From contig JANHCV010000018.1 of the NCBI GenBank assembly GCA_025594325.1, positions 1 to 64,000 of the forward strand: a stretch of DNA of 64,000 nt, in the 5' to 3' direction. The notes below the pieces were generated by a model that was given only the letters and a program-made list of their open reading frames with translations, had not been told where the DNA came from and ran no database searches. Position numbers and translations under genes: made by a program. The stretch is from Blastocladiella emersonii ATCC 22665. Taxonomy: Eukaryota > Fungi > Blastocladiomycota. This document shows, one piece after another, positions 24,200-29,822 of this stretch (positions are counted from its first letter, which is position 1; every line of letters begins with the position of its first letter).

Positions 24200-24866
24200 T
24201 CAGGCAAAGCTGAACAAGGTCATCTCGTGCGGCAGGTGCGAGCCGTTGACCGTGGTCACGGTCACGGACTGGCCGTCGGCGCTCGTCGTGGTCTGGCTCG
24301 ATATCGACCGCCAGTTGCCGTGCACGGTGCTGCTCCTGCCGCCGCTAAACGTGGCCGAGTGGTCGATCAACGTCTCCTGAGCGGGACCGGCGGAAGCGTC
24401 GTCGCCGAACCCGGAACCGAGCGCGAACACGTCGCCGTGGTTGCCCAAGAAGGAGGAGGAGGAAGAGGTGCGTCCGTGCCGCCCGTGGCGGTGGGCCAGC
24501 AGGCGTCGTGCGCGTTGCCGTGCCAGGCGCCGTATCCGCTGGCGTGGTCGTGGGTCGGGAATGAGGACGACGCCTCGTGGTACGAGTAGCCCATCGGGGG
24601 CCATCCCGCGTGGTTACTGCTGAAGGTGGTGGACCCATGGGCGTCAAACTGGTCGTTTTGGCGGTGATCGACGGGCACGCCGTTGACGAGGGTCGTGGTG
24701 TGGGACTCGCCGTTGGGCAGCGTTGTGGTCGACGTCCACATGGACGAGGAAGAAGACGTGGCGGAGACCGAGAAGGCGGCAGCGGGAACAGGTGCGACAT
24801 CACCGTGCAACTGCTGCTGTGACTGGGCCAGCCGTGACTGGAGCTGCGAGTGGAGCTGCGCAGCGT
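24200..24866 (-). pseudogene. 5'-truncated, frameshifted Ser/Thr/His-rich gene body with two TTTxxxG..TxVNG motifs
   Basis: MWTSTTTLPNGESHTTTLVNG and ISSQTTTSADGQSVTVTTVNG lie in different frames. One missing C near 24505 (CAC GAC GC CTG CTG GCC) would join them. Confidence 0.6.
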
Positions 24867-24871
24867 ACGGG

Positions 24872-25048
24872 TTAATATGTCGTCGGTGCTTCGGGCGTGA
24901 CTCCCTCCTGGACCACGGGTATTGCTGGTTGGGCGGGGTAGGAAGCGGCGCGATCGACGAAGGTGACGGCCGCTCCGCGAGCGGCGAGCTGCGAGTCCAG
25001 CAGGCAGCCAATGCTTCCGGCGCCGATGACGTGCAGCCTGCGCAACAT
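24872..25048 (-). pseudogene. Truncated paralog of the ketopantoate reductase 5' end (58 codons, then TAA)
   Basis: MLRRLHVIGAGSIGCLLDSQLAARGAAVTF...VVQEGVTPEAPTTY* versus intact MLSRLHIIGAGNIGCLLGSQLLARGTAVTF...VVQHGVAPDAPTTSL. Confidence 0.92.
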
Positions 25049-25117
25049 AGTTTAGCAAGTCTGATCAAGTTACATGAAGCCCGAGCTGCAAGGAGGGAGA
25101 AGACATGACGGCGGCCC

Positions 25118-25172
25118 CGAGCCTTGACGGCGAAGCGGAGGCCGAGCATCACGCGAGTGGCGGAGCACGTCT
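25118..25172. promoter_or_regulatory. Conserved core of the duplicated bidirectional promoter (right copy)
   Basis: 22-bp and 26-bp blocks identical to 14717-14771. Confidence 0.7.
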
Positions 25173-25209
25173 CGTTCGGTCCGCCCTCTCCAAACTCTCT
25201 CATGCAACC

Positions 25210-27887
25210 ATGGATCGCGCGCAGAAACCGCCGCTACTCGATGCATTCGACCTAGTCTTTGTGTTTTCCTACCCGGGTCAAGTACGGAGCGCCCTCCGCC
25301 CACGCCCGCGTGCCCTCGCTGATCGGCTTGCCCGGCGATAGAACACAGAAGCGTTCCTGCGCCGCACCAACCTGGCGACGGTGCACCGCGTCGTCAACGT
25401 CTACGAGGAGTGTGCTGGCCGCTCGCTGCGCCAGATCGCCGCCCTAGTCCATGCTCGGCTCGTCGACGTACGTGCCGCTTCCGCTCACCACAGCGAACGA
25501 TCGAGCTGACCCGTGTCCGACGCTGTAGCGTAACCGCCTGGTCCTCATCTTCCCAACGCCCGGACAGGGCGTCGTCGCCAACTACCTGTCCGCGCTGCGG
25601 CGGCTCGGGTCCGCGAAGCTCGGCCCGACGCGTGTTGCGGCGGTCCGGCCGGTGATCCCCGACTCGCTGTTCGTGCCGTGGGCCGTGGAGTGGGCGCGCG
25701 CGGGAACGCTCGACGGCGAGCCACGGCTCGCCACGGCTTTCGCCATGGACCCGGTCCCGTGGATCGAGCTGGCGTCCGGGATGCTGCCCGTGGCGGGCGA
25801 GGACGACGACGAGGCAGTCACGCTCGTGCGCCCGACGGCGATGCTCGAGGCGCCCGGCGGGAAGTCGGCGTTCACCATGTCGGTACTTGATTCCCCGCTG
25901 TCTCGGCCGATGCGATCTCGAGCTGACCTGTTACTCTGCACAGGCTCTGATCCTCGACGGCTCGGACGTATTCGTGGGCAAGCAGCTCACTATCGACGAC
26001 CGGTTCCTCGTGCCGACACAGCTATGGTGCGCCGAGTCGACGGCGCACGGCGGGCGCGTGATCGTGACGTGGAACGTCAAGGCGCGTCCGATCCCGGCGT
26101 TCATGGTGCAGCACGCGGCGACCAAGCTGTCGGCGGCGCTCGGCAACGTGCCCGTGTACGTGCTCGTGGTGGCGACCCCACCCGCCGTCCACGCCGCCGC
26201 TGTCCCCACCGCACTCGCCGCCGCACCGGGCGCGACACCAGCTCCCGACCCGCTCATCTTTGTTCCGTCGGGCCAGCTCGCGTGGCTGCAGCGGCGGCAC
26301 CGGCTCGCGCTGCACCGCACGCTGTTCGTGTCGTCGGCGCTCATGCAGCCGTGGATCCGCCGCGTCGAGCCGGTGCGGTGGGCGCAGGTCGCGACCAAGA
26401 ACCAGCTGCGCCGGCTCGTCGAGACGCTCGACGACGGGCGCGCCGCGATCCCGGCGTGGACTGCCGGGGTGGTCGACTCGAGCGAGGTCAAGTTTGGGCT
26501 CAAGAGGTACGCTTACTCTCGCCTGCCACGATAGACGATTCGACTGACGCGCTGTGCCAGTAGCTCCCCGCTGTACCTCCCGCTGTACCGCGACGACGGC
26601 AACGTGGCGGCGATGAAAGAGGACGCGGACGCGCTGTGCGTCTTCCACTCGCTGCACTGCCCGGACGCGGCGGCGCTCAAGGCGTGGCACAAGCAGCTGA
26701 CCGAGGCCGCCGAGCGCGCCATCCTGTACCGCCCGCGGCGCCCCGACGACATTGGCCTGTACGGCGCCGGGTCGCAGTCGCAATCCCAGTCTCAGTCGCA
26801 GTCGCAGTCGACGCAGGTCCAATCCCAGTCGCAATCGCAGTCCCAGTCGGCGTACAACAACGCCAACACGCAGTTCGACACGCAGGTCGACAACCCGCCC
26901 GAAGACCGGCTCGTTCTGGGCGACGACGAAGATGAGGATGACGACGACGAATCGCCCGTCGCCCCGCCGCCCTCGAGCCAGTCTTCGCAGCGCAAGCTCC
27001 CGTTCTCGTCGCAGGCGAGCACCGCGTCGCGCAAGAGCGGCGGCGGCGGCGGCGGGTCGCCTCCCCCGCGCCGCCTCATGTCGCGGCCCAGCAACACCAC
27101 GGCGGCAGCCCCCGCAGCCCCGCGCACCCTACCGCCCGCCGTGACGCCGAAACAGCCCTCCTCCGCGCGCGCGCCCGCGTCCACGCCGGCAACGGGCTCG
27201 CCGCCGTCCCCGCCGCCCAAACCGGCAGCCAAGCAGCGGCGCGCGCGCAAGTCCAAGACCGACAGCCAGGAGGCGGCGGCCATTTTCTTGCCGCCCAAGA
27301 GCGACGACGAGGACGAGCCGCGGCTGCGCCGGCACACGGGCGAGGGCGGCGGCGCGCGCAAGCGGCAGCGGACCGAGGAGTATGGCGCCGGTGCCGGGAG
27401 CAAGGGGCTCGAGTCGGTCGACCTGCTGCGGTTCGTCGCGCCGGCGCCGCCGAGTTTGAGCTTGAGCGGGTTCGTCCCGCCGACGCCGAGCGCGGGCGGC
27501 GGGTTGATCGCGCCGACGCCGAGCGCCAGCGGATCGGTCGTGGCGACACCAAGTTCGAGCGGGTCCGTCGCGGCACCGTCGAGTGCCAGCGCGTCGCTCA
27601 CGACAACGCCGAGCGCCAGCCGGTCAGCTGCGCCGTCGCCGAGCGTAGTAGCCCGGCCCCCGTCGGCAGCAGCGGGGATCCCGATCCAGCGGGTGAGCGC
27701 GACCACGAGCGCGGCCGTGTCGGGTTCGGATACCGACACGGACACGGACGACGGTGGGGCGGTACCCGCGCCGAGACCTACGCCGTCGACTGTGGTCCGG
27801 CCGCTGTTCTCCCTGTCGGCGATCATGACGCAGGTGGCGGCGGCGGGCGATGGAGGCGGCGAACTCTCGGGCTCGGACACGGAGTGA
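25210..27887 (+). CDS. Degenerate polynucleotide-kinase-like + HAD-IIIA-phosphatase-like protein with SQ/TQ cluster and disordered tail (5 exons)
   Basis: Introns at 25282-25341, 25468-25528, ~25883-25943 and ~26508-26572 give a continuous ORF. The gene itself is well supported; the domain call is a by-eye alignment to PNKP/T4 PNK/GmhB motifs. Confidence 0.65.
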
Positions 27888-27993
27888 GGTCAAGAACACA
27901 CAAAGCGCGGAGACGAGTTGTATTTTGCATTATGTACAAGGGGGTGTGCGTGTATCAAAGGATATCCAGCTACTACCTGCGAGCTACGCTACG

Positions 27994-29445
27994 CTACTCT
28001 GTCGTCGAGACGGACGACACGGACGCGGGCGACGCGTCGATGAGGCCGCGGACGGGCGCGGCGGCGGCGGACACGGACCCGGGCACGGGCCGCGCGGCGC
28101 GGGCCTTCTGGAGGCGCTTGAGCGAAGCGGCGGCGGCCTTGGCGCGCTCGGCGGAGGCCTTGCGGGCCATGTCGGCGCGGAACAGCTCCATGGACTTGAG
28201 CGTCTGGCGGAGGCGCGAGGCGAGCACGTCGAAGGTGATGTCTACGGGCTGCCAGTCGAGGTGGTCCTCGCCCTTGCGCGGGATCAGGTCCTGCAGGAAC
28301 ACCTCCATGTGGACCGACATGTCGACGAGGCGGCCGCACAGGATCATGGGGTCGCGGCACGGCGACGCGTCGTGGTCGGCGCGCACCAGCGACATGCCGT
28401 CGGTGCCGTACACGATGCGGATCGCGTGGTTGTTGCGCGACTCGGCGGGCACCACGGCGGCCACCTCGGGCCGCTGCTGGTAGTAGGGCGCCACGTCGCT
28501 CGTCACCGTGGCCGGCGCGAGCGGCAGGTCGAGCGCGGCCGAAGTCGCCGCCGACGCCGAAGAGTGGGGCGGCGGGTGCGGGTCGGGGAGCGGCGTGGAC
28601 GTGACGGCGAGCTGCGACGGGCGCAGGGCGCGCGGGGCGTCGGTGCCGGCGGCGAGGACGTGGCGGTGCGGCGACAGCGGGTCGATATCGGCGGCGGTGG
28701 TCATGGAGCGGCGGAACAGCGGCGTCGGGGCAGCGACGGCGGCGGCGGTGCCCGAGAGCGGGTGCAGGACGGCGGCGGGGTCATCGAGGTACGACGAGTT
28801 GGCGGTGCCGAGGAACAGGTCCGGGTACATGGCGGCGGCGGTGGCGGGCCCATCGGCGGGGCCGAGCGGGTCGCTGAGGGTGGGCGGGCCGAAATCGAAG
28901 GCGGGGAAGCCCGAGGGCGACGTGGAGGTCAGGTCGCGCAGGTAGGCGTAGTTGAGCGAGGCGACCGACGCGGGCAGGGCCGCGGCCGTGGCGGTGCGGC
29001 GGTACGGCGGGAGGGCCGGGTTGGCCGAGGCCGAGGCGGCGGCGGCAGCAGCGAGCGGGTTGGCGGCGGCGGCCTGGCGCAGGAGCAGGTCGCGGTCCCA
29101 GGCGAGAAAGTCAAACGCGGCGCTCGAGGCGAGCGGGTCGGCGACGGGCGGCGGCGTGAGGCGCGGCGGGTACGCGTGGCCGTAGCGGGCGCGCTGCTGC
29201 TGCTGCTGATACTGCTGCTGGTGGTGGTACTGGGCCTGCGCCTGCTGCTCCTGGTCGTGCTCAAAGAGCGAGATGAAATCCTGGTTGCCCATGAGCGTGG
29301 CGGCCACGGTCGAGGGCGACGGGAGGATGGGGGCGGCGGCGGTGGACGTCGTGGTGGCGGTGGTGGGGGCGGCGGCAGAGACGGGCTCGGCAGCGGCGGT
29401 GGTGGTTGACGATGAAGATGACGACGGGGGAGAGGACGAGTCCAT
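27994..29445 (-). CDS. Hypothetical protein: long low-complexity N-terminus, ~110-aa ordered-looking C-terminal region
   Basis: Single long GC3-rich ORF starting MDSSSPPSS, ending with NHAIRIVYGTDGMSLVRAD...VDITFDVLASRLRQTLKSMELFR; no family recognised. Confidence 0.7.
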   Translation of the reverse strand: MDSSSPPSSSSSSTTTAAAEPVSAAAPTTATTTSTAAAPILPSPSTVAATLMGNQDFISLFEHDQEQQAQAQYHHQQQYQQQQQRARYGHAYPPRLTPPPVADPLASSAAFDFLAWDRDLLLRQAAAANPLAAAAAASASANPALPPYRRTATAAALPASVASLNYAYLRDLTSTSPSGFPAFDFGPPTLSDPLGPADGPATAAAMYPDLFLGTANSSYLDDPAAVLHPLSGTAAAVAAPTPLFRRSMTTAADIDPLSPHRHVLAAGTDAPRALRPSQLAVTSTPLPDPHPPPHSSASAATSAALDLPLAPATVTSDVAPYYQQRPEVAAVVPAESRNNHAIRIVYGTDGMSLVRADHDASPCRDPMILCGRLVDMSVHMEVFLQDLIPRKGEDHLDWQPVDITFDVLASRLRQTLKSMELFRADMARKASAERAKAAAASLKRLQKARAARPVPGSVSAAAAPVRGLIDASPASVSSVSTTE

Positions 29446-29822
29446 GGTGGAGACGCAGCGAGTCTTTTGAAGGTTGCAATGCGCGACTTGGGCGATGAGA
29501 GATGCGCGCGATGGCGGGCGGGGCGATGATGGAGCGGGAGACGGCGGCGGCGTGGGACGACGGGGCGATCGTCGACTGCAAGGTCGGCGGCCCGCCGGTG
29601 CCATCATGCGGGGGCCGCCGCTGCGTTGCCAGTCGAGATCGGGAGCGGGGGAGCGCTGGGTATCGGCGATCGGGAGCGACCGCGACCGCGATGCCGACCG
29701 CCGAACCGACCGCGTTCCCGGTCACGCTGCGTCACCTGGTGCGCCACTCACTGCTCGCCGTCCCTGCCATTTGCTGCCCTTCATCGCTCCCGCGCTGCCC
29801 TCTCCCCGCTGCCCGCAACCCA

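What the first reader, a model, noticed from the sequence alone, without database searches (positions are those of the whole stretch)
25210..27887. Candidate double pseudo-enzyme: dead polynucleotide kinase + dead HAD-IIIA phosphatase in T4/bacterial order, with an SQ/TQ cluster
The spliced N-terminus DLVFVFSYPGQNTEAFLRRT...HRVVNV...RNRLVLIFPTPGQGVVANYLSALRRLG follows the PNKP kinase pattern (VVAVGFPGAGKSTF...HVNRD...KRVAIDNTNP...RARYV..AR..G) but lacks the Walker A GKS/T and the catalytic Asp. The next domain (SALILDGSDV...VIVTWN...LGNVPVYVLV...VPSGQLAWLQRRHRLALHRTLFVSS) follows HAD-IIIA/PNK3P motifs (FDxDGT, xxTNQ, RKPxPG...H.LD..RS..VGD) with the catalytic residues lost. Eukaryotic PNKP is phosphatase-then-kinase, whereas kinase-then-phosphatase is the T4 Pnkp order. 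The tail has 10 SQ and 3 TQ dipeptides within ~40 aa (from ~26773), the ATM/ATR target signature. Inference: a non-catalytic DNA/RNA-end-binding scaffold under checkpoint-kinase control, possibly an undescribed repair or meiosis factor.
Basis: inference. Interest (0 to 1): 0.7.

Follow-up and report, generated by a model that had tools for sequence, protein, structure and literature searches.

The report
Dead PNKP-like protein with SQ cluster
A five-exon gene of an aquatic (blastocladiomycete) fungus encodes an unannotated, lineage-restricted protein whose two folded domains look like a DNA-end kinase and a DNA-end phosphatase that have both lost their catalytic residues, followed by a conserved cluster of checkpoint-kinase target sites; this suggests a non-enzymatic DNA-damage scaffold, but the function is untested.

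Summary
Its tail carries exactly 10 SQ and 3 TQ within 38 residues.

No exon matches any Pfam family. A scan of 1.8 billion representative proteins found relatives only in Blastocladiomycota: Allomyces, Blastocladiella britannica and Sorochytrium. All are 'hypothetical'.

- **Orthology and selection.** The orthologs share the architecture and three intron positions. In Allomyces they are under purifying selection (dN/dS 0.10-0.20 in the folded parts).
- **Whole model.** Its best Foldseek hit is T4 Pnkp, with the domains in the same order.
- **Catalytic residues.** The Walker A lysine and HAD motifs III and IV are absent in every member. The HAD nucleophile Asp is invariant.
- **Negative result.** Profile-profile comparison with T4-type and canonical PNKP found nothing.
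- **Canonical enzyme.** An intact PNKP lies elsewhere in the genome.

The fold reading is therefore supported at moderate confidence. The checkpoint or repair function remains inference. The scan holds the same reading of this same stretch, and none on other DNA.

The parts
25210..25281 (+). Exon 1 (24 codons): N-terminus, first beta strand and a relic P-G of the P-loop (S-Y-P-G-Q). No G-K-S/T follows.
   Evidence: It aligns to the N-termini of the orthologs. The intron after it is at the same position and phase as in both Allomyces genes.
25342..25467 (+). Exon 2 (42 codons): predicted helix 1, strand 2 and helix 2 of the kinase-like domain.
   Evidence: Splice signals. It corresponds by position to P0001 residues 24-67. 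BLASTP alone is not significant.
25529..25882 (+). Exon 3 (118 codons): strands 3-4 and the conserved W-A-x-E-W-x-x-A helix of the kinase-like domain, then a poorly conserved linker.
   Evidence: BLASTP to P0001 gives E 4e-7. Invariant residues are listed.
25944..26506 (+). Exon 4 (187 codons plus 2 nt): HAD-like domain.
   Evidence: phmmer gives E 3e-13 to P0001. The orthologous residues 196-348 model as a HAD fold. The intron before it is conserved with Allomyces.
25956..25958 (+). Asp at the HAD motif I nucleophile position (A-L-I-L-D-G-S). It is invariant in the family. The second motif I Asp is Ser here.
   Evidence: It lies at the end of the first strand of the HAD-like domain in the model.
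26271..26300 (+). The most conserved block of the family, G-Q-L-A-W-L-Q-R-R-H. It lies where HAD motif III would be, but has no Lys.
   Evidence: Invariant G, A-W-L, R-R-H in four lineages.
26564..27887 (+). Exon 5: a last conserved strand-helix element, then a tail of about 370 residues that is predicted to be disordered, and the stop codon.
   Evidence: The intron before it has the same phase as a B. britannica intron at the equivalent place.
26772..26885 (+). S/TQ cluster: 10 SQ and 3 TQ in 38 residues. Two of the TQ sites read T-Q-x-D.
   Evidence: 0 of 2000 shuffles. An equivalent cluster is present in all four orthologs. It is encoded by an imperfect hexanucleotide array.
26922..26951 (+). 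Acidic run (D/E x10) between the S/TQ cluster and the R-K-L-P motif.
   Evidence: Allomyces has S-D-T-D-x-D-N-D-D at the same place.
26991..27011 (+). Conserved short motif R-K-L-P-F-S-S. The family pattern is R-[KRQ]-L-P-x-[SFM].
   Evidence: It is the only [RK]-x-L-P shared by all five proteins, always just after the S/TQ cluster.
27357..27371 (+). Basic cluster R-K-R-Q-R, which looks like a nuclear localisation signal.
   Evidence: Comparable basic runs occur in the B. britannica and Sorochytrium tails.
27726..27752 (+). S-D-T-D-T-D-T-D-D acidic Ser/Thr cluster (CK2-type sites by composition).
   Evidence: S-D-T-D or S-D-S-D is also found in Allomyces and Sorochytrium.
27798..27812 (+). C-terminal motif R-P-L-F-S. 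The family pattern is basic-x-L-F-[DS] near the C-terminus.

Best explanation
The gene encodes a nuclear, non-catalytic descendant or mimic of a kinase-then-phosphatase polynucleotide kinase/phosphatase. It is found only in blastocladiomycete fungi.

Shown:
- It is a real, single-copy, spliced gene.
- It has orthologs in at least four other Blastocladiomycota.
- Those orthologs share intron positions and, in Allomyces, are under purifying selection.

Supported at moderate confidence:
- The N-terminal ~185 residues adopt a P-loop-kinase-like fold whose P-loop has collapsed to P-G, with no Lys or Ser/Thr.
- The next ~160 residues adopt a capless HAD-IIIA-like fold. It keeps the nucleophile Asp but lacks the second motif I Asp, the motif III Lys and the motif IV acidic pair.
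- Neither ATP-dependent phosphorylation nor Mg-dependent phosphoester hydrolysis is therefore expected.

Inferred:
- The former phosphatase cleft, now lined by the invariant Asp and an invariant A-W-L-x-R-R-H block, binds a phosphorylated ligand (a 3'-phosphate nucleic-acid end or a phosphopeptide) without turning it over.
- The disordered tail acts as a regulated docking platform. It carries a conserved S/TQ cluster for ATM/ATR-type kinases, acidic S-D-T-D sites, an R-x-L-P motif, basic nuclear-targeting runs and a C-terminal L-F motif.
- The most likely role is an adaptor in DNA-damage signalling or end repair that works beside the intact canonical PNKP of the same genome.
For: **Gene and family**
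- Exon structure and translations.
- Only 3 representatives at E<=1e-3 among 1.84 billion proteins. All are Blastocladiomycota and all are 'hypothetical'.
- Same architecture across the family.
- Conserved intron positions.
- dN/dS in Allomyces: 0.10 (N-domain), 0.17 (HAD-like), 0.14 (S/TQ to R-K-L-P), 0.35 (tail).
- Single copy in the genome.

**Fold**
- Atlas shape search: a GmhB cluster at TM 0.62.
- ESM feature search of the ortholog: all ten listed clusters carry PNK3P and AAA_33 (score 0.82, a lead only). The Atlas's own model matches GmhB (TM 0.71 by row) and APS kinase.

**Loss of catalytic residues**: alignments.

**Canonical PNKP elsewhere in the genome**: it has G-S-P-A-S-G-K-S, D-L-D-K-T, R-K-P and F-V-G-D intact.

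**Tail**
- The S/TQ cluster is non-random in all five proteins (0 of 2000 shuffles each) and always directly precedes R-x-L-P.
- An ATM/Tel1-like gene is present: TAN and FATC hits 9.3 kb apart on one strand.
Against: - Both structure models are low-confidence (mean pLDDT 46.8 and 48.6, from 6-7 sequences). They are of the Allomyces ortholog, because the window's spliced protein was not joined.
- No sequence-level link was found. No Pfam hit on any exon or ortholog. AAA_33 and PNK3P searches of the genome do not touch this gene. hhalign of the family profile against T4 PseT, an 11-phage Pnkp profile and the genome's own PNKP gives probability 0.2 or less.
- The window's own exon 4 gave no HAD lead in the feature search.
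- No expression data were found.
- Ligand binding, nuclear localisation and phosphorylation are all inference.
- An SQ run can arise by repeat slippage.
Confidence: 0.5

Rival explanations
1. A lineage-specific protein with two generic Rossmann-like alpha/beta domains and no PNKP ancestry. The PNKP resemblance would be an artefact of low-confidence modelling plus the commonness of three-layer alpha/beta sandwiches.
For: - pLDDT 47-49.
- All profile-profile comparisons are negative.
- Feature-search scores of 0.82 are reached by a third of shuffled proteins.
Against: - Two independent searches (sequence features, AF2 plus Foldseek) converge on the same rare two-domain combination in the same order.
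- An Asp sits exactly at the end of the first HAD strand in every member.
Confidence: 0.2
2. A cell-cycle-regulated replication or chromosome factor. R-x-L-P would be a cyclin-docking (RxL-type) site and the many S/T-P sites of the tail would be CDK targets. The SQ run would be a tolerated low-complexity spacer rather than a checkpoint target.
For: - R-[KRQ]-L-P followed by S/F fits the general cyclin RxL docking pattern (my recollection of the ELM pattern, not tested).
- The tail is rich in T-P and S-P.
- The SQ run is a hexanucleotide array.
Against: - An S/TQ cluster is kept at the same site in all orthologs, including Allomyces, where it is not a simple repeat (D-S-Q..D-S-Q..D-S-Q..T-Q).
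- That segment has dN/dS 0.14.
- The two readings do not exclude each other.
Confidence: 0.15
3. Still an enzyme. The retained HAD nucleophile Asp, together with the invariant R-R-H, would catalyse an unconventional metal-independent phosphoryl or other group transfer.
For: Invariant Asp at the nucleophile position, and invariant Arg-Arg-His nearby in sequence.
Against: - The general acid/base Asp (D+2) is present in only one lineage.
- The motif III Lys and the Mg-binding motif IV acidic residues are absent in all members.
- No known HAD phosphatase works without them (established knowledge of the HAD superfamily).
Confidence: 0.07

Closest known systems
Phage T4 polynucleotide kinase/phosphatase (PseT; PDB 1ltq, 2ia5)
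   Same: The domain order is the same: N-terminal P-loop kinase fold, then a C-terminal capless HAD fold. It is the best Foldseek hit of the two-domain model. VIA aligns it across both domains.
   Different: - No detectable sequence or profile similarity.
- Walker A G-K-S/T is absent, and the invariant T4-family residues D167, K258 and D277-D278 have no counterpart.
- A linker of about 35 residues separates the domains.
- There is an extra strand-helix element and a disordered tail of 300-440 residues.
- It is eukaryotic and contains introns.
Eukaryotic PNKP / S. pombe Pnk1 (Pfam PNK3P + AAA_33; PDB 3zvl, 3u7e)
   Different: - The domain order is the opposite.
- The genome has its own intact PNKP with all motifs, and this gene matches neither Pfam model.
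- The catalytic motifs are lost.
HAD-IIIA small phosphatases (GmhB, HisB-N; PDB 2gmw, 2fpr)
   Different: No motif II-IV residues, no Zn-binding loop evidence, and fusion to a kinase-like domain and a long tail.
S/TQ cluster domains of checkpoint adaptors and targets (Rad9, Mrc1, Hop1, Chk2/Rad53)
   Same: Three or more S/TQ within 100 residues, in a disordered segment, conserved in position across orthologs. Two sites read T-Q-x-D, which resembles the pT-x-x-D preference of Rad53-type FHA domains (my knowledge, not tested).
   Different: No BRCT, Tudor, HORMA or kinase domain. Phosphorylation has not been shown.
Ku-binding motifs of APLF/WRN/MRI and the XLF-like C-terminal motif (Grundy et al. 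2016, PMC4831024)
   Same: - R-[KRQ]-L-P resembles the K-R-R-L-P-V-W and T-R-V-L-P-S-W peptides quoted in that paper.
- The near-C-terminal basic-x-L-F-[DS] resembles K-K-P-R-G-L-F-S of XLF.
- Ku70 and Ku80 are present in the genome.
   Different: The defining Trp of R-x-x-P-x-W is absent in all five proteins. Binding was not tested. Short motifs of this kind often match by chance.

Membership tests
Polynucleotide 5'-kinase (P-loop, Pfam AAA_33 / T4 Pnk kinase domain) | Walker A G-x-x-x-x-G-K-[ST] between strand 1 and helix 1 | tested here: not met
   The loop reads S-Y-P-G-Q-N-T here, and A-P-P-G-Q, V-H-P-G-A and A-H-P-L-H in the orthologs. No member has the Lys. The T4-type family keeps G9, G14, K15 and T17 invariant.
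Polynucleotide 5'-kinase (P-loop, Pfam AAA_33 / T4 Pnk kinase domain) | Catalytic Asp and Arg after strand 2 (T4 D35, R38) | tested here: inconclusive
   After the predicted strand 2 the window protein reads Y-E-E, while three orthologs have D-R or D-S. No residue-level structural alignment was available.
Polynucleotide 5'-kinase (P-loop, Pfam AAA_33 / T4 Pnk kinase domain) | Significant match to the family HMM or profile | tested here: not met
   No AAA_33 hit on the exons or orthologs. The genome-wide AAA_33 scan misses this gene. hhalign probability is 0.2 or less.
Polynucleotide 5'-kinase (P-loop, Pfam AAA_33 / T4 Pnk kinase domain) | P-loop NMP-kinase-like fold | tested here: inconclusive
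HAD-IIIA phosphatase (Pfam PNK3P / Hydrolase_like) | Motif I D-x-D-x-[TV]: nucleophile Asp and general acid/base Asp | tested here: not met
   The first Asp is invariant (window 25956-25958). The second is Ser here, Ala in Allomyces and Sorochytrium, and Asp only in B. britannica.
HAD-IIIA phosphatase (Pfam PNK3P / Hydrolase_like) | Motif II Ser/Thr at the end of strand 2 | tested here: inconclusive
   Thr is present in the window protein (V-T-W-N) but is not conserved in the orthologs.
HAD-IIIA phosphatase (Pfam PNK3P / Hydrolase_like) | Motif III Lys and motif IV acidic pair (G-D-x-x-x-D or D-D) | tested here: not met
   The motif III region reads V-P-S-G-Q-L-A-W-L with no Lys. The motif IV position reads F-V-S-S here and V-T-N, V-S-N and V-T-H in the orthologs. 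The genome's canonical PNKP has R-K-P and F-V-G-D.
HAD-IIIA phosphatase (Pfam PNK3P / Hydrolase_like) | HAD Rossmannoid fold without a cap | tested here: met
HAD-IIIA phosphatase (Pfam PNK3P / Hydrolase_like) | Significant match to the family HMM or profile | tested here: not met
S/TQ cluster domain (SCD) | At least 3 S/TQ within 100 residues (definition from my knowledge of Traven and Heierhorst 2005) | tested here: met
   13 in 38 residues here. The orthologs have 5, 5, 6 and 12 in their densest 60-residue window. No shuffle out of 2000 reaches these counts.
S/TQ cluster domain (SCD) | Phosphorylation by ATM/ATR-type kinases | not testable with these tools
   Only the presence of an ATM/Tel1-like gene could be shown.
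APLF-type Ku-binding motif | Minimal core R-x-x-P-x-W (PMC4831024) | tested here: not met
   R-x-L-P is present in all five proteins, but the sixth position is S, S, M, S or S and never W.

The most novel reading that the evidence does not exclude
Blastocladiomycete fungi may have turned a T4-order polynucleotide kinase/phosphatase into a phosphate-end or phosphopeptide 'reader'. The dead HAD cleft (invariant Asp plus R-R-H) would clamp a 3'-phosphate end. The tail would recruit FHA-domain or Ku-type partners through ATM/ATR-phosphorylated T-Q-x-D sites, S-D-T-D sites, a Trp-less Ku-binding-like R-x-L-P motif and an XLF-like C-terminal L-F motif. That would be a repair scaffold with no counterpart in yeast or animals, possibly derived from a viral or bacterial Pnkp.
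Probability: 0.12. Interest if true: 0.75.

Novelty: new variant of a known kind. Interest (0 to 1): 0.5.

Why it matters
Pseudo-enzymes derived from DNA-end-processing enzymes are rare. I know of no described protein, and the papers I searched describe none, that combines a dead polynucleotide kinase with a dead HAD 3'-phosphatase.

If the reading holds, it gives a concrete, testable example of a repair enzyme scaffold being reused as a regulated adaptor. The lineage (Blastocladiomycota) has barely explored DNA-damage machinery.

It would also add an unannotated family to the catalogue of S/TQ-cluster proteins. And it raises the question of where a kinase-then-phosphatase arrangement, otherwise typical of phages and bacteria, came from in a eukaryote.

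Tried and rejected
- **Pfam.** Scans of all five exons and three orthologs gave nothing above noise.
- **PDB sequence searches.** Exon 3, exon 4 and the family profile found nothing.
- **Word-indexed protein search.** Run with the Allomyces protein and with the family profile, it recovered only the two Allomyces proteins and missed the known B. britannica and Sorochytrium members. It says nothing about range. The third search was not spent.
- **hhalign.** The family profile was compared with T4 PseT, an 11-phage Pnkp alignment and the two halves of the genome's own PNKP. Probability was 0.2 or less.
- **ESM feature search.** The window's own exon 4 gave low recognition and unrelated hits, so it is uninformative.
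- **Expression.** The four runs that hold the stretch are all DNA, from one sample and one study.
- **DNA-PKcs and ATR marker domains.** PF08163 and PF08064 gave no hit, but the controls did not ring either, so absence is not shown.
- **Literature.** Nothing on the Allomyces locus tag or on PNK pseudo-enzymes.
- **Complex prediction.** Not used. I make no binding claim, and the Ku80 vWA domain of this genome is split by an intron, so it has no single reference.
- **Readings considered and rejected.**
  - A Sld3/Treslin-, MTBP/Sld7-, Rad51-paralog- or HORMA-type protein. No family match and a different predicted fold.
  - A PP1 R-V-x-F site at R-K-L-P-F. Pro is disfavoured at the x position and the Phe is not conserved.
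- The spliced full-length protein of the window was never assembled, searched or folded. Exons were used by reference only, and both structure models are of the Allomyces ortholog, with the window's exons as alignment rows.
Full report
**1. What is at the coordinates**

The window is GC-rich (61-74%) and carries short spliceosomal introns. Reading 24800-28300 together with the ORF table gives one gene on the + strand with five exons: 25210-25281, 25342-25467, 25529-25882, 25944-26506 and 26564-27887. The four introns are 60, 61, 61 and 57 nt. Each has a GTAC-type donor, a CTGAC or CTGAT branch-point motif and an AG acceptor. The product has about 812 residues.

An in-frame ATG at 25105 could add 35 residues, but all orthologs begin where the 25210 start does. 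It would also leave only 57 nt to the divergent neighbour.

No RNA run holds the stretch, so the model rests on sequence and comparison. Every search used single exons by reference, and the joined-protein step is left out.

**2. Relatives**

No exon matches any Pfam family or any PDB sequence. phmmer of exon 4 against 1.84 billion representative proteins returned three hits:

| Protein | Species | E-value | Length |
|---|---|---|---|
| P0001 | Allomyces macrogynus (AMAG_05425) | 3e-13 | 670 aa |
| P0002 | Blastocladiella britannica | 3e-8 | 749 aa |
| P0003 | Sorochytrium milnesiophthora | 2e-4 | 624 aa |

A fourth relative, P0004, is the A. javanicus ortholog. All four are annotated 'hypothetical' and have no Pfam domain. 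So the window comes from a blastocladiomycete. Another agent's note names it Blastocladiella emersonii, which I did not test.

- The gene is single-copy in its 32.7-Mb genome.
- The five proteins share one architecture.
- Exon 3 aligns to P0001 at E 4e-7.
- Introns 1 and 3 sit at the same residue and phase as Allomyces introns. Intron 4 matches a B. britannica intron in phase and place.
- Between the two Allomyces species, dN/dS is 0.10 for the first domain, 0.17 for the second, 0.14 for the S/TQ-to-R-K-L-P segment and 0.35 for the rest of the tail.

This is a functional gene family, not decaying DNA.

**3. Fold**

I modelled the Allomyces ortholog, with the family and the window's exons as alignment rows.

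*Two-domain model.* This model covers residues 1-470 and is poor overall (pLDDT 46.8). The second domain reaches 60-80.
- Foldseek against the PDB puts T4 polynucleotide kinase/phosphatase in the first eleven places, aligned over about 375 columns (E 3e-3, probability 0.84). HAD-IIIA phosphatases follow at probability 0.98-0.99.
- The Atlas shape search agrees, with a GmhB cluster at TM 0.62.

*N-domain alone.* The N-domain folded alone (pLDDT 48.6) has the strand-helix order of a P-loop kinase.
- Designed P-loop proteins are among the hits.
- I therefore rate the kinase fold as likely, not shown.

*Independent line.* A language-model feature search of the ortholog listed ten clusters. All of them carry PNK3P and AAA_33. 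The score is 0.82, which the tool treats as a lead only. The Atlas's own model of that protein matches GmhB and APS kinase.

*Against homology.* No profile evidence exists. hhalign of the family profile against T4 PseT, against an alignment of eleven diverse phage Pnkp proteins, and against the genome's own PNKP gave probability 0.2 or less. The window's exon 4 alone gave nothing in the feature search.

**4. Catalytic residues**

| Motif | Window protein and family | Status |
|---|---|---|
| Walker A | P-G relic after strand 1, with no Gly-Lys-Ser/Thr in any member | Lost |
| HAD motif I, first Asp | At the end of the first HAD strand | Invariant (25956-25958) |
| HAD motif I, second Asp | Ser here, Ala in Allomyces and Sorochytrium, Asp only in B. 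britannica | Lost in most |
| HAD motif II | Thr present here | Not conserved |
| HAD motif III | No Lys | Lost |
| HAD motif IV | S-S here, T-N, S-N and T-H elsewhere | Lost |

The strongest conservation lies in G-x-x-A-W-L-x-R-R-H-x-L (26271-26300), where motif III would be. There is a second conserved block, W-A-x-E-W-x-x-A, in the first domain.

I read the kept Asp plus the new Arg-Arg-His as a sign that the old active-site cleft is still used, most simply to bind rather than hydrolyse a phosphate.

**5. A canonical PNKP exists**

Pfam PNK3P and AAA_33 scans of the genome find an intact gene on another contig, in phosphatase-then-kinase order. It has D-L-D-K-T, R-K-P, F-V-G-D and G-S-P-A-S-G-K-S. 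A second PNK3P copy lies 3 kb away. Neither model touches the window's gene.

**6. The tail**

- The DNA is an imperfect hexanucleotide array with mixed codons.
- An S/TQ cluster sits at the same place in all four orthologs. This includes Allomyces, where it is not a repeat. In each protein no shuffle out of 2000 reaches the observed density.
- The cluster is followed in every protein by acidic residues and then R-[KRQ]-L-P-x-[SFM].
- Further on come basic runs, an S-D-T-D or S-D-S-D cluster in most members, and a basic-x-L-F-[DS] motif near the C-terminus.
- The genome has an ATM/Tel1-like gene and both Ku subunits.

The R-x-L-P and C-terminal L-F motifs resemble the APLF-type and XLF-like Ku-binding peptides printed in PMC4831024. 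The defining Trp is missing, so I keep this as a lead only. A cyclin RxL reading is equally possible.

**7. Verdict**

The structural interpretation is the best available explanation: a dead kinase-like domain plus a dead HAD-IIIA-like domain in T4 order, with an S/TQ cluster.
- It is well supported for the HAD half.
- It is moderately supported for the kinase half.
- It has no support at the sequence-profile level.
- The proposed function as a checkpoint-controlled end-binding scaffold is plausible but untested.

I class it as a new variant of a known kind: a lineage-restricted, doubly inactivated PNKP-like protein.

Noticed in passing
G000:C11:849704-853333 (loci L001-L005): The canonical PNKP (PNK3P then AAA_33, motifs intact) has a second PNK3P-matching copy about 3 kb downstream on the same strand. 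This is a tandem duplication. An earlier first-stage note (s1-276160) describes it as a PNKP duplication with a pseudo-phosphatase paralog.
   Followed up: partly
window 26567-26589: A perfect 12-nt tandem duplication (CCCGCTGTACCT x1.9) lies directly after the intron 4 acceptor. It gives P-L-Y-L-P-L-Y where the orthologs have a single W/L-P-x-L. It is a recent in-frame slippage.
   Followed up: partly
window 25105-25209: An in-frame ATG lies 105 nt upstream of the start used here. It would add 35 residues with no counterpart in the orthologs and would leave only 57 nt to the divergent neighbour that starts at 25048 (-).
   Followed up: partly
window 24872-25048 (-): A short ORF begins with a dinucleotide-binding G-A-G-S-I-G motif and is divergently oriented 162 nt from this gene. 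Other first-stage notes call it a truncated PanE-like pseudogene. I did not examine it.
   Followed up: no
L022:1070-1171 (Allomyces javanicus ortholog P0004): The deposited gene model of P0004 uses one 102-nt intron where A. macrogynus has two introns. This gives an unrelated residue 24-45 segment, so it is probably a mis-annotation. I left that segment out of the dN/dS calculation.
   Followed up: partly
window 27994-29607 (-): A convergent 537-codon ORF ends 107 nt after this gene's stop. It is rich in low-complexity Ala/Pro/Ser/Thr with a compact C-terminal region. A first-stage note flags it as an orphan. I did not examine it.
   Followed up: no
G000:C18:352233-352310 (+) and C18:379057-379134 (-): Two identical-scoring FATC matches lie in inverted orientation 27 kb apart, each with a TAG inside the match. 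This may be an inverted duplication carrying the end of a PIKK gene.
   Followed up: no
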